In this document: positions 13,843-29,449 of the stretch, piece by piece | Position numbering within the stretch: position 1 is the first letter of the stretch | Layout: each line of letters starts with the position of its first letter | NCBI RefSeq assembly: GCF_902713615.1 | Contig: NC_052149.1 | Span: 198,582,059-198,646,058, forward strand | Direction: 5' to 3' | Length of the DNA stretch: 64,000 nt | DNA from: Scyliorhinus canicula | Lineage: Eukaryota | Notes under the pieces: generated by a model | The model's input: only the letters and a program-made list of their open reading frames with translations | The model's database searches: none | What the model was told of the DNA's origin: nothing | Position numbers and translations under genes: made by a program

Positions 13843-14499
13843 AAAAATTTATTGGACAAGCATATGGATGATAAGGGCATAGTGTAGGTTAGATGGCCTT
13901 TAGTTTTTTTTTTCCATGTCGGTGCAACATCGAGGGCCGAAGGGCCTGTACTGCGCTGTATCGTTCTATGTTCTATGTTCTATGTTCTAATTCCTAGCAC
14001 CGGCCCTAATTCCGGGGCATGATTCCACCCCCCGCCCCCAATCTGAAACACTGAAATTCGAGCTTTGATCAAAATGGTGGGTTTAACCCCAGTTTCCCAC
14101 ATCAGTCATCCTTCCCCTGTTCAAACAGACATCCTCGACTCCGGTACTGCAGCTTGCTACCCCTCACTCCCAGGTACGCTTTGCAATTCTTGTGCACCTT
14201 TTTTGGCACCTTTCATTAATAAAATTATTTCCATCACCTTTTTAAAATCTAGCTCTGATTCAGTTTGTGATTTATTTAGGATAGATACATTATTTATTCT
14301 GCACACCAGTCTATCTCTTAACAGATCATTCAGAGATGTCCAAAAGTTACAATATTCTGCTGGTTTCCTTAATCTGGCCATGAAGACAATAGACTCTCGT
14401 ATTCCCACCCTCCCCCACCCACCCCCGCCCCCCTCCACTGTTGAATTGAGTTTAGGATGATAATGATTCCTAACCAACTCCACAAGTTCAGTAAATTAT

Positions 14500-15050: not shown

Positions 15051-16177
15051 CTAAGGGTGTCTGGAGGGCTGTCAATGAATGAAGAACAAAGCACAGTGAG
15101 AATGAGGGATTGGGAATGGAAATAGAGAATGTTGTTTCTCCTTCAAAGAGAGTACTAATCTCCATTGTCTGAAATGTCCAGGAACACAAGTTTTAGCTGT
15201 CAACTCCTCAATTTTTGTGGAGCATTCATTATGCTTGCAGACAGTCGAGACAGTTTAAATGCATATGGTTCAAAGGATGGACAAGTGGGAGGTGACCAGT
15301 ACGCTATTGCAAGACTTTGTTGGAAATTTCCCATTATGTGCAGGACTCCATGGACATACAGTGACAGCCTAGAAGTTACCTACAGCATCACAATGCCAGG
15401 AACAGCTTAGAAAGATATTGATGACTTCCATAGTGACTCCGAGCTCTGCAGATACCCTCAAAATCAACCGAAACACCAAGCTTGCACGGAGCTTCCAGAA
15501 GCTGATTGGTCACTTTCGTTGGCAGGTGATGACGCTAACCAACAGCACCTTTAATTCTGTGGCCAGCGCCAGTGGGTTGAAAGCAGTGAATGCAGCTGTT
15601 ACTGTCCCTCTGAGAAATAGCATTGAGCCTGGCGCCTTTGGTCCCACTAATGCATACAAATGAGGGAGCTTCAAACATGGAGCCAGTGCCATTTGCCTGA
15701 GGGACATCAGCTTCCCGATGAAATGAGTCACCTCAGGCCTCAAAAGGCACCAGAGGACCCAGCCACCCACTACTTCATTTTACAATTTCAATTAGTATTA
15801 TTTTTGTACAGAAACACTGTACGTTTACTCAATATCTTAATATTTCAAATTCGCCCATGATCAGAGGCTCACCGTATGGGTATCGTGGATGAACATTGGT
15901 GTCCTACCAATTGCTTTGGTTGCTAAGTGATACATCGCATCCAAGTCTCCCTATTCGGGATCAAAGAATTTCCAATGATGACCAAGAGTTTGTTCCCTGT
16001 GCCTATCTCTCTCTTTATTCTGCATGAGGTCTCTCCTATGTTGTTTAGAGATGCAGAAAATTCCTTCCCTCCCTCTGATTCCTACTCTACCACAGTAGAG
16101 AAGCCCATTCTGTCCCCTTTCCAACAGTGTGATATAAAGTTTGGAAGTCACCACATGAGAAACTATGGGGATTGAAC

Positions 16178-23720: not shown

Positions 23721-24008
23721 TGTGGTGAATGTATAAGTACTGTTAATTCACCAGTATACTGTGTTGCATTATACCATGCTATTAACCCTGTGGGCTCTAT
23801 GGGCCACTGTGTGGCTTCACCCACAGGGAGAGATGTGGAGTATGTACGGGCTCCACCTATGGCTCCGCCCCTTTCAGGAAGTATAAGAGCAGCTGACCTG
23901 CGGGACCGCCTTCAGTATTGTACTTGTTGCAGACAGGCAAAGTTGTAAGCTGATTAAAACCATTGTTTACTTCGACTGGAGTCGCCGAGTGAATTGATGG
24001 TCGCATCA
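23721..24008 (+). repeat. 5' LTR
   Basis: TG...CA; TATAAG at 23882; ATTAAA at 23953-23958. Confidence 0.9.
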
Positions 24009-24245
24009 ATTTAAGCAGCTTAGAGAATTACTATGGAGTCAGCCCTCAAACCTGACAGACTGTAACTCAATCCTCAGGCCGCGGAGACAAAATACATTTT
24101 TTCACATTGGCTTCAGTGTTTCACGGCCTACCTGGCCGCGTCGTTGACATCATCCGTCATGGACGAACAGAAATTGAGTCTTCTCCATGCACGGGTGAGC
24201 CATCGCATTTCTGCCCAACTCGACGAAGCCACCTCCTCTACTGAG

Positions 24246-24371
24246 GGGAATGGGAAAGTTCAGCGCCGACGTTTCAGCGCCGACGTTTCAGCGCCGCCGT
24301 TTCAGCGCCAGGACATTTCAGCGCCAAATATTTCAGCGCCAAATATTTCAGCGTCAGGACGTTTCAGCGCT
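24246..24371 (+). repeat. Left terminal array: 8 copies of a TTTCAGCGCC-type core, spaced 13-16 bp
   Basis: Cores start at about 24258, 24271, 24285, 24299, 24315, 24330, 24345 and 24361. Confidence 0.92.
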
Positions 24372-24587
24372 CATTCATTCAGAAATCATTCTTGAGTATG
24401 GTCACAGGTATGACACAGGTATACCAGCTTTTACACTTAGTTATTTGGTTGTCTTTAGATTTTGTTGGAGTTTTATTATGATTACTGTTTAGATAAAGTT
24501 AGAGTTTAGTTAAGAAGTTTTTATACTTACTTAGTTATTTGGTAAATTTCTTTTGGTAAATTTGCTAAGTTCCATATCTTTAAACCC

Positions 24588-25976
24588 ATGGCTGAATCAG
24601 TGAAAAGCAAGCGAGGCAGAGAGAAGTTCTGTCATGAAGGTTTTATATATCGTTTTGACAAAGAAAGCAAGAAACAAAAGCAAGTTAAGTTTTGGCGATG
24701 CCATGAGGATGGTAGGTGCAAGGCCCGCATTCACACGTTAGAAAGAGAGGTGATCGAAAAGATCAACGAACATACTCATCCCCCATCTGCAGTTGCTATC
24801 GAAGTGGAAAAGGTCATAACTGATGCGAGAGACCGGGCTGAAAAGACTTGTGAGCCTCCAAGTACGCTTATCAACAAGTGCATTGAAAAAATGTCCGTGG
24901 CAGGTATGGCACAGTTACCAAACAGGCAGGCAATGCGAAAAATTATTCGTAGAAAACGAGACAAAGTTAATCAGGTCCCCGATAATCCAAGATCGATTCA
25001 AGAGCTTCAGTTACCTCATGAATACATGATGTATAAACCCACCCCAGAAACCGAGGAAAATTTCTGTTTAAAGGATAGTGGTATGAACAACGAACGGATT
25101 ATTATATTTGGGAGAGAGAGTTGGTTAGAACACATGGCAACTTCCACGACTTGGTATGCTGACGGAACATTTGCGGTAGCACCGCACCTATTTTATCAAG
25201 TTTATATCATCATGGTTAGGAAAAATAACGGAGTTCACCCTGTATTGTACGCGCTTTTACAAAACAAACAGTATGCGACCTATATTATGTTATTTGCGAT
25301 GGTAAAAGAGATGATTACAAATGCAGGACATGCCATTATCAATTGTGATTTTGAACGCGCTGTTTTTACTGCCATGAAAGACTCCTTCCCCAATATAGAA
25401 GTAAGAGGCTGCCTTTTTCATCTGTCTCAAAATATACTGAGTCTGTATCCCGATTTTGCATTACATTCGAAAATGATAACTGCCCTATGTTTTGTGCCAG
25501 TTGACGACCTTGACAGTCACGTGGATTCTTTAGCAGGTAATTTACCGGAGGAGTTAATTCTGGTTTTAAACTATTTCGAAGACAATTATATCGGCCGTCC
25601 TAATCGCCGAGGAACAGGCAGACGAAGTCCTTTATTTCCTACCGAGATGTGGAATATGTATCAAAGAACATTAGATGGGGATGACAGAACAAATATCTAT
25701 GCTGAGGCGGCCAACAGGAGATTGAAAAGTGAACTGTTACTGTCACACCCAACTATCTGGAAATTCATTGATGTCCTTAAGCATGTTCAAAAGGGAAGAG
25801 ACGAGCACTTCGAGAAACTTTTAGCTGGCAATGAACCTCAATTAAAATTACTTAAATATAGAAAAGCTGATGAGAGAATATTGAAAATTGTTTCCGAATA
25901 TGGCAGCAGGAATGAAATTGACTTTATTTCCTACCGAGATGTGGAATATGTATCAAAGAACATTAGATGGGGATGA
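24588..25976 (+). CDS. FLYWCH zinc finger + MULE DDE transposase (462-aa ORF; native C-terminus displaced by an internal duplication)
   Basis: FLYWCH: GFIYRF..FWRC....CKARIHT...HTH. Catalytic motifs WYADGTF, INCDFE, GCLFH and RTN.YAE. Confidence 0.9.
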   Translation: MAESVKSKRGREKFCHEGFIYRFDKESKKQKQVKFWRCHEDGRCKARIHTLEREVIEKINEHTHPPSAVAIEVEKVITDARDRAEKTCEPPSTLINKCIEKMSVAGMAQLPNRQAMRKIIRRKRDKVNQVPDNPRSIQELQLPHEYMMYKPTPETEENFCLKDSGMNNERIIIFGRESWLEHMATSTTWYADGTFAVAPHLFYQVYIIMVRKNNGVHPVLYALLQNKQYATYIMLFAMVKEMITNAGHAIINCDFERAVFTAMKDSFPNIEVRGCLFHLSQNILSLYPDFALHSKMITALCFVPVDDLDSHVDSLAGNLPEELILVLNYFEDNYIGRPNRRGTGRRSPLFPTEMWNMYQRTLDGDDRTNIYAEAANRRLKSELLLSHPTIWKFIDVLKHVQKGRDEHFEKLLAGNEPQLKLLKYRKADERILKIVSEYGSRNEIDFISYRDVEYVSKNIRWG

Positions 25977-26213
25977 CAGAACAAATAACTATGCTGAGGC
26001 GGCCAACAGGAGATTGAAAAGTGAACTGTTAATGTCACACCCAACTATCTGGAAGTTCATTGATGTCCTTAAGCATGTTCAAAAGGGAAGAGACAAGCAC
26101 TTCGAGAAACTTTTAGCTGGCAATGAACCTCAATTAAAATTACTTAAATATAGAAAAGCTGATGAGAGGATATTGAAAATTGTTTCCGAATATGGCAGCA
26201 GGAATGAAATTGA
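25630..26213 (+). repeat. 292-bp tandem duplication inside the transposase 3' end
   Basis: Copies at 25630-25921 and 25922-26213; 5 substitutions counted; CT microhomology at the junction. Confidence 0.92.
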
Positions 26214-26506
26214 CTACCTTCGTTCAATAGGGCACAATTTAACAAACTAAATGCGTTTTTTCCAATGAATATCCAATGAATGTCCAATTAACTTTCCTTT
26301 TAATGATTGATTTTATGAACTTATAGATTTGTAAATTGTTTTAATGTACTGTTTTTGGATCTTTATAAGTGGATCTTTTACAATAAAAACATTTAGTTAA
26401 CACTTAAGTTTTATTTCATTTTATGCACTTACAGATTTGTAAATTGCTTAGTGCCAAAAAAATTCTGTCATAACTATATGACATCATTGGAGAATTTTTT
26501 TTTTCT

Positions 26507-26670
26507 GGCGCTGAAAAGTCCTGGCGCTGAAACGGCAGCGCTGAAACGGCGGCGCTGAAACGGCGGCGCTGAAACGGCGGCGCTGAAACGGCGGCGCTGA
26601 AACGGCGGCGCTGAAACGGCGGCGCTGAAACGACGGCGCTGAAACGGCGGCGCTGAAACGTCCCGCACCC
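26507..26670 (-). repeat. Right terminal array: 11 copies of a GGCGCTGAAA-type core, mostly 14-bp period
   Basis: (GGCGCTGAAACGGC)n, the inverse of the left array. Confidence 0.92.
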
Positions 26671-27307
26671 CTACTGAGGCCCTCACGATACTCAAACGCA
26701 TCTACGTGCGGCCCGTGAATGACGTCTACGCATGACATATCTTCACTACTTGCCGCCAGCGCCCCAGGGAGTCGCTAAATGACTATCTGCGCGACGTCAA
26801 AGCCCTCACGCGCGACTGTAACTATCAGGCCGTTACAGCCACACAGCACATGAACTGGCCGTCTGAGACGTTTACATTGCGGGGGTCTGATCGAACTATG
26901 TGAGGCAGCGCCTGCTCGAAAAAGGGGCCCTGGACCTGGTGGACACGGTAAAACTGGCGACCTCACAGGAGGTCGCTTTTCAGAGTCTCACTGCGTTCGC
27001 AGCTGATCACGCGACTCCCTCGTGGGCCCCTGACCAGTGACTACCCCAGGCCTGCGCCACGCAGTCGCCCGCCCACCACCGGGGGGGGGATATCTTGCCA
27101 TTTTTGCGGCCAGCCGTAACACTCCCGGCAACAATGCCCGGCCCGCAACGCGAACTGCAGCAGCTGCGGGCGAAAAAGACACTTCGCAAAGGTCTGCCTG
27201 GCCAAGCCTAAACACTCGAACTCGAACGCACAAACGCGATCCACTGACTCTCAGGCCCGCCGACCCCATAATGTGGCAGCGTTTCTGCCGACCCCGACTC
27301 CGCACAA

Positions 27308-27523
27308 CACGTGCGGCTCACGGGGGCCACCATCTTGGCCATCCTCCCCCACGCGGCCAGCCACGTGCGATCCATGGGGGCCGCCACCTTGGGCACCACC
27401 TTCCTCGTCACCCGCCACGTGCGATCCATGGGGGCTGCCATCTTGGGCGCCATCTCACTCGCCGCTCGCCACGTGCGATCGACGAGGGCCGCCATCTTGG
27501 CCATCACCTGCTACGCCGCTCGA
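27308..27523 (+). repeat. Four 54-bp tandem units between the gag knuckles and the protease
   Basis: CACGTG at 27308, 27362, 27416 and 27470; translate as (A/N)TCxxxG(P/L)PxW repeats. Confidence 0.85.
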
Positions 27524-28042
27524 CGCATGCAAGCTGCACGGACAGTCATCGCGGGGCTGCCCCAGCACCGCTGAACATGCCGCCAACTACCCTCAACTCA
27601 GTACAGTCACCTTGGACCAGTCAAGACCCAAGCACCTCAAGAGCTCCATGAAGGCCGTCCGGGTTGATGGATACGAGACACCTTGCCTGTTCGACTCCGG
27701 GAGCACCGAGAGCTTTGTCCACCCGGATCTGGTAAGACGCTGTTCACTCCCGATATTCCCGACGCAACAAACAATCTCCCTCGCCTCTGGGTCGTACTCA
27801 GTACAAATCCAAGGGCGCACTACTGCAACCTTAACGATACAGGGCACCGAGTATATTAATTTTCAATTGTACGTGCTCCCAGACCTCTGCGCCCTCTCCT
27901 TTTAGGACTCGATTTTCAGTGCAATCTCAGGAGCCTAACTCTTAGTTTTGGCTGACGCCTGCCCCCGCTCACTATATGCAGCCTCGCAACACTAAAAATT
28001 GACCCCCCTCTCCTCTTCGCTATACCTCACAGGAGGTATAGT

Positions 28043-28987
28043 ATGCAGGACAGGGCATTTATTAGGTCCGAGGTCCAGTGTCTCTTGCGGGAAGGAGTCA
28101 TAGAAGCCAGTAATAGCCCCTGGAGAGCTCAGATGGTGGTCGTCAAGACCGGGGAAAAGTTCCGGATGGTGGTTGATTACAGCCAGACCATTAACCGGTT
28201 TACTCATCTTGATGCGTACCCCCTTCCCCAGATTGCAGACATGGTAAATCAGATCGCGCACTACCGCATGGTCTCCACGGTGGATCTGAAGTCTGCATAC
28301 CACCAGCTCCCAATCTGCCCGGAGGACCGCCACTACACGGCGTTTGAGGCAGACGGCCGACTTTTTCATTTTCTCCAGGTCCCCTTTCACGTCACGAACG
28401 GGGTTTCGGTGTTCCAACGAGCGATGGACCGAATGGTGGACCAGTACGGGCTGCGGGTCACGTTTCTGTACTTGGACAACGTCACCATCTGCGGCCATGA
28501 TCAGCAGGACCACGACACCAACCTCCATCGATTTCTCCAAACCGCCCAAAAACTTAACCTCACTTACAACAAGGAGAAATGCGTTTTCCGCACTACCAGG
28601 CTAGCCATCCTCAGCTACGTCGTGGAAAACGGGGTCCTAGGACCTGACCCTGACCGTATGCGCCCCCTCCTACAACTCCCTCTCCCTCACTGTCCGAAGG
28701 CCCTCAAGAGGTGCCTTGGATGTTTTTCCTATTACGCGCAGTGGGTCCCCCAGTATGTGAGCAAAGCCCGCCCACTATTTAAAGCCACCCTTTTCCCACT
28801 GTCAGCCGAGGCTCGCCAGGCCTTCAACTGCATCAAGGCGGACATCGCCAAAGCCACCATGAGTGCGGTGGATGAGTCTGTCCCCTTCCAGGTGGAGAGC
28901 AACGCTTCAGAGGTCGCTCTCGCCGCCACCCTTAACCAAGCAGGCAGGCCAGTAGCGTTTTTTTTCACGCACCTTCTTCACCTCTGA
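28043..28987 (+). pseudogene. Gypsy reverse transcriptase / RNase H ORF fragment
   Basis: SNSPWRAQMVVVK, DAYPLP, STVDLKSAYHQ, YLDN, VESNASEVALAATL. Confidence 0.9.
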
Positions 28988-29158: not shown

Positions 29159-29449
29159 GTGGTGAATGTATAAGTACTGTTAATTCACCAGTATACTGTG
29201 TTGCATTATACAATGCCATTAACCCTGTGGGCTCCATCTATGGGACACTGTGTGGCTTCACCCACAGGGGGAGATGTGGAGCATGTACGGGCTCTGCCCA
29301 TGGCTCCACCCCTTATAGGAAGTATAAGAGCAGAAGATCTGCGGGACTGCCTTCAGTATTGTACCGGTCGCAGGCAGGCAAAGTTGTAAGCTGATTAAAA
29401 CCACTGTTTACTTCGACTCGAGTCTCCGAGTGAATTGATGGTCGCATCA
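29159..29449 (+). repeat. 3' LTR (first base lost in the deletion)
   Basis: About 22 substitutions and one 3-bp indel versus the 5' LTR by manual count. Confidence 0.9.

What the first reader, a model, noticed from the sequence alone, without database searches (positions are those of the whole stretch)
24238..26678. Structurally complete FLYWCH-MULE (Phantom-like) transposon in a shark-like vertebrate genome
Seen: a 2425-bp element with GGG...CCC ends and an exact TSD (CTACTGAG, or 9 bp with a one-base ambiguity). Removing it restores the host gag frame (…ATSSTE|ALTILKR…). A single intronless ORF carries FLYWCH, D(GTF), D(FE), CxFH and E motifs and stays open for 462 codons, while surrounding TE ORFs are mostly broken. 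Knowledge: FLYWCH + MULE transposases with foldback-like repeat ends define Phantom-type Mutator elements, described mainly from invertebrates and insect viruses; coding Mutator elements are uncommon in vertebrates. Inference: a recently active, possibly undescribed chondrichthyan MULE family.
Basis: partly seen in the sequence, partly recalled or inferred. Interest (0 to 1): 0.8.

Follow-up and report, generated by a model that had tools for sequence, protein, structure and literature searches.

The report
Prawn-like Mutator transposon in a shark
This is a real but damaged copy of a multi-copy, transcribed Mutator-type (FLYWCH-MULE, Phantom/Tm1-like) jumping gene in a shark genome. A prawn carries the same element with the same ends, which points to horizontal transfer into a vertebrate, a group where such elements were thought to be doubtful.

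Summary
A 2425-bp element (24246-26670) lies between an exact 8-bp duplication (a 9th base also matches) inside the gag region of a Gypsy retrotransposon. Its ends begin GGG and finish CCC and carry inverted arrays of a 14-bp unit. Its ORF has significant FLYWCH and MULE Pfam domains, an intact DDE triad and a CxxH motif.

"Structurally complete" is overstated. This copy has a 292-bp internal tandem duplication that frameshifts the C-terminus. It has also lost a net 36 bp (12 aa) after CxxH and carries substitutions at two near-invariant residues (P248H, N370I).

Contigs from several DNA and RNA runs of the same organism show the dominant family form lacks both indel lesions. That form is high-copy (probably about 10^2 copies) and is transcribed. 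This copy differs from it by about 1%.

A Macrobrachium rosenbergii (prawn) element has the same terminal motif, the same 14-bp unit and a 9-bp TSD. Its transposase is 79% identical (dS 0.45-0.75, dN/dS about 0.13-0.2). In the tree the shark protein sits in a clade of crustacean and unlabelled marine-sample sequences, so cross-phylum horizontal transfer is the best reading.

It is a new member of a known kind. Other first readers of this scan have noted further copies elsewhere in this genome.

The parts
24238..24245 (.). Left copy of the target-site duplication CTACTGAG. A 9th base, G at 24246, is ambiguous between TSD and element.
   Evidence: family D11
24246..26670 (+). The whole MULE element, 2425 bp
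24246..24255 (+). Left terminal motif GGGAATGGGA. It is identical over GGGAATGGG to the prawn element's left end and to another shark copy seen in an RNA-run contig.
   Evidence: loose end at 24287
24259..24370 (+). Left subterminal array, about 7.6-8 units of 14-15 bp with core TTTCAGCGCC. The inner units are degenerate.
24371..24587 (+). 5' leader with short internal repeats. The dominant contig of DNA run X5 carries 17 extra bases after 24449.
24588..25976 (+). Open reading frame as it stands (462 codons). The last 18 codons are frameshifted read-through into the second copy of the duplication.
24600..24779 (+). FLYWCH zinc-finger domain (aa 5-64). C38, C44 and H62 are invariant and H64 is near-invariant.
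   Evidence: 2RPR, TM 0.68
25152..25433 (+). MULE catalytic-core domain (aa 189-282), with D192 (25161-25163), D254 (25347-25349) and C275xxH278
25438..25447 (+). Site of a net 36-bp (12-aa) loss private to this copy. The dominant genomic and RNA contigs carry 44 letters where this copy has 8.
25630..25921 (+). First copy of the 292-bp tandem duplication. It holds the catalytic E373 (25704-25706) and the private N370I change (25696).
25922..26213 (+). Second copy of the 292-bp tandem duplication, 5 differences from the first. Dominant family contigs skip one copy.
26214..26250 (+). Native C-terminal coding end (...YLRSIGHNLTN and stop), now out of frame with the ORF because of the duplication
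26382..26387 (+). AATAAA, the likely polyadenylation signal. RNA-run depth falls from about 35-38 to about 6 just after it, while DNA depth stays high.
26507..26660 (-). Right subterminal array, about 11 units of the same 14-bp repeat, inverted relative to the left array
26661..26670 (-). Right terminal motif (reverse complement GGGTGCGGGA). It differs from the left motif at 3 of 10 bases. The prawn element shows a similar asymmetry (GGGTACAG...).
26671..26678 (.). Right copy of the target-site duplication CTACTGAG
24144..24245 (+). Host Gypsy gag-region reading frame up to the insertion (...DEATSSTE)
26679..26735 (+). Host Gypsy gag-region frame resuming after the insertion (ALTILKR...). A stop follows after 18 codons, and the next piece has a weak Retrotrans_gag hit (E = 0.14).
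27273..28987 (+). Host Gypsy aspartyl protease (27273-27905) and reverse transcriptase/RNase H (28043-28987) downstream. The best named relatives are in Scyliorhinus torazame.

Best explanation
The stretch is one copy of a cut-and-paste DNA transposon of the Mutator superfamily, of the FLYWCH-MULE (Phantom) type. Its ends are built like those of Tm1 from root-knot nematodes.

Likely mechanism (inferred by analogy with Muta1):
- The N-terminal FLYWCH zinc finger of the transposase probably recognises the 14-bp units (core TTTCAGCGCC) repeated in inverted orientation under both ends.
- The DDE catalytic domain (D192, D254, E373, with CxxH and a conserved W), which has an IS256/MULE-type RNase H-like fold, would cut the element out through hairpins on the flanking DNA. 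It would then join the 3'-OH ends into a staggered target cut, producing the 8-9-bp duplication.

This copy inserted into the gag region of a Gypsy retrotransposon. It has since decayed or was damaged at insertion. It has a 292-bp tandem duplication that frameshifts the C-terminus, a net 36-bp loss behind CxxH, and about 1% substitutions, several of them CpG-to-TpG. It is most likely no longer autonomous, but it keeps both ends and could still be moved in trans.

The family it belongs to is multi-copy in this shark. Its dominant sequence lacks the two indel lesions and is transcribed, so the family was active recently and may still be.

The same family, with the same termini and repeat unit, occurs in a decapod crustacean. 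The shark's closest relatives otherwise come from crustaceans and marine samples of unknown source. The family therefore most likely reached the shark lineage by horizontal transfer.
For: Shown:
- TSD, termini and inverted 14-bp arrays.
- FLYWCH and MULE Pfam domains above their curated cut-offs.
- DDE, CxxH and W conserved in a 50-sequence alignment.
- AlphaFold model with pLDDT 90.4. Its best solved-structure matches are the IS256-family ISCth4 transposase (E 7e-6, probability 1.0), then integrases and Hermes. The N-terminus matches the FLYWCH1 domain 2RPR.
- The lesions of this copy.
- In DNA runs X1 and X5 and RNA run X11 of the same organism, the contigs that carry all the depth skip the 292 bp and hold 44 letters instead of 8 at 25438-25447.
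- Depth is about 200-345 on the element, against 2-8 for low-copy contigs in the same runs.
- In X11 the element has depth 30-47, while the Gypsy flanks have 0-14. In DNA those flanks are 5-50 times deeper than the element. This argues against DNA carry-over in the RNA run.
- Another copy's 5' end with a different flank, and an empty-site contig.
- The prawn element L007:2424-4681 has GGGAATGGG.../...GTACCC ends, the TTTCAGCGCC unit in inverted arrays and the 9-bp TSD CTCTGTAGG.
- Shark versus prawn: 79% protein identity, 81-83% CDS identity, 84% over the first ~104 bp of the end, dS 0.45-0.75, dN/dS 0.13-0.20.
- In the tree, shark + P0001 (98) lies inside a 5-row clade (100) with Palaemon carinicauda and marine-sample sequences.

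From the literature:
- Muta1 mechanism (PMC5499845).
- Tm1 architecture: FLYWCH-MULE transposase, ~14-bp repeats in composite TIRs, asymmetric terminal motifs, 9-bp TSD (PMC3169594).
Against: - No transposition event was observed directly. 'Recently active' rests on contig depth, low divergence and transcripts.
- Copy number is a rough reading of assembler word depth without a single-copy control.
- I could not read the dominant contigs themselves. That the family's main form encodes a fully open ORF is inferred from its listed differences: none makes a stop and the indels restore frame.
- X11 is only guessed to be an RNA library ('RNA?'). The one certain RNA run with raw reads (X24) laid very few reads on the element.
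- FLYWCH binding to the 14-bp unit is an inference.
- The shark-prawn dS of 0.45-0.75 is not small, so the prawn is not the direct or recent donor.
- The organisms behind the closer relatives (L002 at 94% in aligned codons; L001) are unknown and could themselves be fishes.
Confidence: 0.8

Rival explanations
1. This copy is itself an intact, autonomous master element.
For: The ORF is open for 462 codons with all catalytic residues, and both ends and the TSD are present.
Against: - The 292-bp duplication replaces the conserved C-terminal ...EYLRxIAHN motif with an out-of-frame tail.
- Twelve residues present in all 49 homologues are missing after CxxH.
- P248H and N370I hit near-invariant positions.
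- The dominant family form differs at all of these points.
Confidence: 0.1
2. The family is an old, vertically inherited vertebrate or chondrichthyan Mutator lineage, and the likeness to crustacean elements reflects slow evolution, not transfer.
For: - Sharks evolve slowly (general knowledge).
- A lizard (Hemicordylus capensis) also carries a FLYWCH-MULE ORF, 50% identical.
- dS to the prawn copy is 0.45-0.75, which is not tiny.
Against: - Vertebrates and arthropods split over 500 Myr ago, so neutral sites and non-coding termini should be saturated. Yet the terminal ~100 bp are 84% identical and the 14-bp unit is the same.
- The shark sequence nests inside a clade of crustacean and unlabelled marine-sample sequences and is only 50% identical to the lizard protein.
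- No annotated shark or other fish protein appeared among 98 hits.
- Copies within the shark are only about 1% from their common form.
Confidence: 0.12
3. The element is invertebrate (prey or parasite) DNA wrongly joined into the shark assembly.
For: The closest named relatives are crustacean.
Against: - It is flanked on both sides, with a precise TSD, by one Gypsy gag frame whose RT is most like catshark proteins.
- It is held at high depth in DNA runs of several samples and studies of the same organism from 2019, 2021 and 2024.
- It differs from the prawn copy by 17-19%.
- Its private changes include CpG-to-TpG decay typical of a methylated vertebrate genome.
Confidence: 0.02
4. It is a domesticated host gene (a FLYWCH transcription factor derived from a transposase), not a transposon.
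For: FLYWCH proteins and MULE-derived genes have been domesticated in animals (PMC10027918). Transposase comparisons give dN/dS of 0.13-0.2.
Against: - It has TIRs with repeat arrays and a TSD, is multi-copy, sits inside a retrotransposon, and this copy's coding sequence is damaged.
- Purifying selection between species is also expected of an active transposase lineage.
Confidence: 0.02

Closest known systems
The element around XP_066961229.1 in Macrobrachium rosenbergii (GCA_040412425.1, CM080476.1; locus L007:2424-4681), an unnamed genomic copy
   Same: - Same left terminus (GGGAATGGG) and CCC at the right end.
- Same TTTCAGCGCC-based 14-bp unit in inverted subterminal arrays.
- 9-bp TSD and similar size (about 2.26 kb).
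- Single intronless FLYWCH-MULE ORF, 79% identical protein, 81-83% identical CDS.
   Different: - The host is an arthropod.
- It has fewer repeat units per end and a different 5' leader with 104-bp tandem repeats.
- It lacks the 292-bp duplication and keeps the 12 residues missing here.
- Its CxxH histidine is replaced (CLFR).
- dS to the shark copy is 0.45-0.75, so it is a relative and not the donor.
Tm1 / Tm1-A, the Mutator/Foldback family of Meloidogyne (Gross and Williamson 2011, PMC3169594)
   Same: - Transposase with an N-terminal FLYWCH and a MULE domain at the same positions.
- Composite TIRs holding variable numbers of a ~14-bp motif.
- Short asymmetric terminal motifs and 9-bp TSD.
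- A Meloidogyne hapla protein is 41% identical to the shark ORF.
   Different: - Nematode host and only about 41% protein identity.
- The sequences of its repeat motif and terminal motifs were not compared here.
- Tm1 is described as senescent, with one transposase-coding copy and many MITE-like derivatives.
Phantom subclass of Mutator (Marquez and Pritham 2010), group 20 of Dupeyron et al. 2019 (PMC6446971); includes Muta1 of Aedes aegypti
   Same: - FLYWCH plus MULE transposase, 8-10-bp TSD, variable and often long TIRs, animal hosts.
- The Muta1 mechanism (flank hairpin, DDE and W) is the working model.
   Different: - Described from flatworms, crustaceans, arthropods, a tunicate and an ichnovirus, not from vertebrates. 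Dupeyron et al. found no credible vertebrate MULE.
- No reference Phantom sequence was placed in my tree, so clade membership is inferred from domain architecture and aphid or nematode relatives.
ISCth4 transposase (IS256 family, PDB 6XGX/6XG8)
   Same: It is the best structural match of the predicted catalytic region (Foldseek E 7e-6, probability 1.0). IS256 is the bacterial relative of Mutator transposases (PMC3169594).
   Different: About 11% identity and TM only about 0.4. It is bacterial and has no FLYWCH domain.

Membership tests
Mutator superfamily (MULE) | Transposase with the MULE domain (PF10551) | tested here: met
   48.9 bits against a cut-off of 27.6, E 9.2e-13, aa 189-282
Mutator superfamily (MULE) | DDE catalytic triad plus (C/D)xxH motif and a conserved W | tested here: met
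   D192, D254, E373 and C275 are invariant, and H278 and W355 near-invariant, in 50 sequences. D-D spacing is 62. D-E spacing is 119 here, or 131 with the 12 lost residues, within the 120-135 reported for most arthropod MULEs.
Mutator superfamily (MULE) | Target-site duplication of 8-10 bp | tested here: met
   8 bp exact, 9 bp possible. The prawn relative has 9 bp.
Mutator superfamily (MULE) | Terminal inverted repeats | tested here: met
   Arms of 66-68 nt are 88-94% complementary and built of 14-bp units. The terminal 10 bp match at 7 of 10.
Mutator superfamily (MULE) | IS256/MULE-type RNase H-like catalytic fold | tested here: met
   Model pLDDT 90.4. The top PDB matches are ISCth4 (IS256 family), then integrases and Hermes.
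Phantom subclass | N-terminal FLYWCH zinc finger on the MULE transposase | tested here: met
   PF04500, 47.3 bits against a cut-off of 23.6, aa 5-64. Zinc ligands are conserved. Fold match to 2RPR with TM 0.68.
Phantom subclass | Phylogenetic placement with reference Phantom transposases (group 20 of Dupeyron et al.) | tested here: inconclusive
   The tree holds aphid, beetle, crustacean, mite and nematode FLYWCH-MULE proteins but no labelled reference Phantom or Muta sequence. The Marquez and Pritham paper was not held.
Tm1-like Mutator/Foldback architecture | Composite TIRs with variable numbers of a ~14-bp tandem motif and short asymmetric terminal motifs | tested here: met
   About 8 units on the left against about 11 on the right. 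The end motifs are GGGAATGGGA and GGGTGCGGGA.
Autonomous (self-mobilising) element | Uninterrupted transposase ORF colinear with functional relatives | tested here: not met
   A 292-bp frameshifting duplication, a 12-aa loss, and P248H and N370I
Currently active family | Insertion polymorphism or new insertions, intact copies, transcripts | tested here: inconclusive
   The dominant form lacks the indel lesions, has high depth and is present in RNA runs. Polymorphism and de novo insertions could not be tested.

The most novel reading that the evidence does not exclude
This shark carries an autonomous Mutator (Phantom/Tm1-like) family that is still active in the germline. It would be the first well-supported vertebrate MULE. 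It was acquired by horizontal transfer from decapod crustaceans or a shared marine vector, and its intact copies would transpose in vertebrate cells.
Probability: 0.35. Interest if true: 0.7.

Novelty: new member of a known kind. Interest (0 to 1): 0.55.

Why it matters
A 2019 survey of Mutator elements across eukaryotes found no credible vertebrate MULE. [quoted passage not shown] This family bears directly on that question. It has a TSD, TIRs, a dominant form without this copy's lesions, a high copy number and transcripts in a shark.

It also gives a concrete case of cross-phylum transfer. The same termini and binding-site-like repeats occur in a prawn and a shark, which are linked ecologically as prey and predator. 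The case can be dated and traced by surveying more marine genomes.

Intact copies could be tested as a vertebrate-compatible Mutator tool, as was done for Muta1. The limit on interest is that the element type, its end architecture (Tm1) and horizontal transfer of DNA transposons among aquatic animals are all known. Automated repeat libraries may also already list the family.

Tried and rejected
- **IMG/VR viral contigs**: scanned with the transposase to look for a viral vector, because Phantom was first seen in ichnoviruses. No relative was found.
- **Rfam on the whole window**: no match.
- **Bacterial promoter/terminator scan of the 5' leader**: not meaningful for a eukaryotic element, so ignored.
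- **PDB sequence search**: only a weak FLYWCH1 hit. The fold search was needed to reach ISCth4.
- **Pfam on the gag pieces either side of the insertion**: not significant (Retrotrans_gag E = 0.14). 'Gag' rests mainly on its position upstream of the protease and RT. I searched the pieces apart and did not join them.
- **Gypsy LTR dating**: I tried to bound the insertion age this way. The only long repeat (23722-24008 versus 29159-29449, 91%) includes leader sequence and lies just after the RT, so it is not a clean LTR pair. I dropped the idea.
- **Literature searches** for shark, cartilaginous-fish or vertebrate MULE/MuDR: no description of such a family. The Phantom paper itself is not held.
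- **Family consensus**: I only listed codon by codon how the dominant contigs differ.
Full report
**1. What is in the sequence**

Reading 24100-26800 shows the host sequence ...CCTCTACTGAG followed by GGGAATGGGAAAG... On the far side...GTCCCGCACCC is followed by CTACTGAGGCCC. CTACTGAG is therefore duplicated exactly at 24238-24245 and 26671-26678 (family D11). The next base (G) also matches, so the duplication is 8 or 9 bp.

The element between the copies is 24246-26670, 2425 bp. Its two ends are inverted repeats built from a 14-bp unit:
- About 7.6-8 units lie at 24259-24370, with the inner ones degenerate.
- About 11 units lie at 26507-26660.
- The core CGTTTCAGCGCCG (up to 1 mismatch) occurs 13 times in the 64-kb window, all at these two ends and in opposite orientation. 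Shuffles give 0.03.
- The outermost 10 bases are GGGAATGGGA on the left and GGGTGCGGGA on the reverse-complemented right, matching at 7 of 10.

**2. The coding region**

The ORF 24588-25976 (462 codons) is the longest ORF in the window. Pfam gives FLYWCH (aa 5-64, E 2.3e-12) and MULE (aa 189-282, E 9.2e-13), both above their curated cut-offs.

In a 50-sequence alignment the following are conserved:
- Invariant: the zinc ligands C38, C44 and H62, the triad D192, D254 and E373, and C275.
- Near-invariant: H64, H278 and W355.

An AlphaFold model built on that alignment has mean pLDDT 90.4. Its best solved-structure matches are the IS256-family transposase ISCth4 (E 7e-6, probability 1.0), followed by retroviral integrases and Hermes. 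The N-terminus matches the FLYWCH1 domain 2RPR with TM 0.68.

**3.

- Bases 25630-25921 are repeated in tandem at 25922-26213 (292 bp, 98%). 292 is not a multiple of three. The ORF therefore runs out of frame into the second copy and ends after 18 foreign codons. The native end (...YLRSIGHNLTN, stop at 26248-26250) is conserved in all relatives and is now displaced.
- Twelve residues present in every homologue are absent after CLFHLSQNIL.
- Near-invariant P248 and N370 (next to the catalytic E) are H and I in this copy.
- The two copies of the duplication differ at 5 sites. Four of these are private to the first copy. The duplication is therefore about as old as the insertion.

**4. The family in the same organism**

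The look-up of sequencing runs found about 0.53-0.58 of the element's 31-mers in at least 20 runs of one organism, both DNA and RNA, from several samples and studies.

Laying contigs of two DNA runs (X1, X5), one presumed RNA run (X11) and raw reads of one RNA run (X24) on 23746-27170 showed the following.
- The contigs that carry all the depth skip exactly one 292-bp copy (joint 25629 to 25922). They hold 44 letters where this copy has 8 at 25438-25447, a net gain of 36 bp or 12 codons. The dominant family form therefore lacks both indel lesions.
- This copy differs from those contigs at about 21 positions in about 1.9 kb, roughly 1%. In the ORF, 7 differences change the residue, each time towards what relatives have at that position, and none makes a stop. 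Several are CpG-to-TpG changes in this copy.
- Word depth on the element is about 200-345, against 2-8 for low-copy contigs in the same runs. That suggests a copy number of order 10^2, but there was no single-copy control, so the figure is rough.
- In X11 the element has depth 30-47 while the Gypsy flanks have 0-14. In DNA the flanks are 5-50 times deeper than the element, so the RNA signal is not DNA carry-over.
- RNA depth drops after about 26390, just past an AATAAA at 26382-26387, while DNA depth does not.
- X24 (oligo-dT raw reads) laid only a few reads on the element, so expression is low or restricted to some tissues.
- A 255-letter loose end in X11 shows another copy's 5' end (...GGGAATGGGACAG) behind a different flank.
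- An X1 contig joins the two flanks with a single copy of the target, with one mismatch. This is an empty site in a paralogous Gypsy copy or in the other allele.

Notes of other first readers report several more copies of 2.0-2.3 kb described as intact, plus deleted ones, elsewhere in this genome. I did not check those notes directly, but they agree.

**5. Context**

Both flanks translate in one frame. An aspartyl protease (27273-27905) and RT/RNase H (28043-28987) lie downstream. The target was therefore the gag region of a Gypsy element, and that frame has a stop 18 codons after the insertion. The RT's best named hits are two Scyliorhinus torazame proteins at 78-80%, which supports a shark host. 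The element's coding region is 40% GC against 46% for the window.

**6. Relatives elsewhere**

The protein search returned 98 hits.
- The best is P0001 at 83%, from a Logan assembly of run ERR1726620.
- P0012 (85%, partial) comes from an ENA metagenome assembly. Its DNA is 91% identical over 986 bp by BLASTN and 94% in aligned codons, with dS 0.16.
- P0006 (67%) comes from a run labelled as a PRJEB4352 marine metagenome.
- Named hits near 50% are from crustaceans, beetles, mites, nematodes and one lizard.
- No shark or other fish protein appeared.

P0001's 90% cluster contains XP_066961229.1 of the prawn Macrobrachium rosenbergii. Its genomic locus (L007) shows a complete element of about 2.26 kb. 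It has the same left terminus (GGGAATGGG), CCC at the right end, the same TTTCAGCGCC unit in inverted arrays and a 9-bp TSD, CTCTGTAGG.

Shark versus prawn:

| Measure | Value |
|---|---|
| Protein identity | 79% |
| CDS identity | 81-83% |
| Identity over the terminal ~104 bp | 84% |
| dS | 0.45-0.75 |
| dN/dS | 0.13-0.20 |

A maximum-likelihood tree puts shark + P0001 together (SH-aLRT 98). They lie inside a 5-row clade (100) with Palaemon carinicauda and two sequences from metagenome assemblies (P0005 and P0006, one labelled a marine metagenome). The lizard protein lies in the neighbouring clade. ESM-Atlas neighbours are clusters whose commonest phyla are Arthropoda and Rotifera.

Non-coding ends that can still be aligned, and unsaturated synonymous sites, between a vertebrate and an arthropod cannot be explained by vertical descent. 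Horizontal transfer is the best reading, possibly through intermediates. The prawn is a relative, not the donor.

**7. Mechanism**

By homology with Muta1, which Dupeyron et al. place in the Phantom group, the following steps are inferred (PMC5499845):
- The transposase binds the ends.
- It makes double-strand breaks through hairpins on the flanking DNA, using the DDE triad and the conserved W.
- It joins the 3'-OH ends to a staggered target cut, and repair of that cut gives the 8-10-bp TSD.

That the FLYWCH finger reads the reiterated 14-bp unit is my inference from the architecture. This copy probably cannot supply transposase, but it keeps both ends, so it could be moved in trans.

**8. Comparison with what is known**

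The closest described architecture is Tm1 of Meloidogyne. It has a FLYWCH-MULE transposase, composite TIRs with variable numbers of a ~14-bp motif, asymmetric terminal motifs and a 9-bp TSD (PMC3169594).

The element meets every MULE criterion I could test, and it has the FLYWCH criterion of Phantom. Placement next to reference Phantom sequences was not tested.

Dupeyron et al. (PMC6446971) found no credible vertebrate MULE and posed their absence as an open question. My literature searches found no report of a shark MULE. Dfam and Repbase could not be queried.

**9. Verdict**

- The claim of structural completeness is wrong for this copy but plausibly right for the family.
- The main added result is the crustacean counterpart with identical ends.
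- It is a new member of a known kind and of moderate interest.

Noticed in passing
window 23722-24008 and 29159-29449: A 291-bp direct repeat (91%) covers the end of the Gypsy LTR and its leader and recurs just after the RT/RNase H ORF. The host Gypsy therefore seems truncated or followed by a second partial copy, not bounded by a clean LTR pair.
   Followed up: partly
L008:14088-15527 (Hemicordylus capensis, GCA_027244095.1 CM050091.1): A lizard gene model (isoform X2) splices SCAN and KRAB exons of a zinc-finger gene onto an intronless FLYWCH-MULE ORF that is 50% identical to the shark protein. The ORF is flanked by 55-nt inverted repeats (14014-14068 and 15839-15893). This looks like a second vertebrate with a MULE copy, possibly exonised.
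   Followed up: partly
window 24577-25385 (joint seen in run X11): One contig of the presumed RNA run skips 807 bases, removing the FLYWCH domain and part of the catalytic core. The ends are CT..TC, so this is not a canonical intron. It is probably an internally deleted family member.
   Followed up: no
window 24449: The dominant contig of DNA run X5 carries 17 extra bases (CGTTTCATCGTTCTAAC) after 24449 in the 5' leader. A similar motif (1-2 mismatches) is present in the related metagenome contig L002. This copy therefore also has a small leader deletion.
   Followed up: no
L007:3001-4407 (Macrobrachium rosenbergii): The annotated prawn copy reads CLFR instead of CLFH, so the CxxH histidine is lost. 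Its 5' leader holds three 104-bp tandem repeats (2590-2904). This particular prawn copy may be inactive too.
   Followed up: no
protein P0023: A FLYWCH-MULE protein 42% identical to the query is deposited as a hypothetical protein of a Macrococcoides caseolyticum MAG. This is almost certainly eukaryotic contamination in a bacterial bin.
   Followed up: no
window 24238-26678: Element plus one TSD copy is 2433 bases = 3 x 811, so the insertion keeps the host gag frame in phase by chance. The MULE ORF lies in the same orientation as the Gypsy genes.
   Followed up: yes
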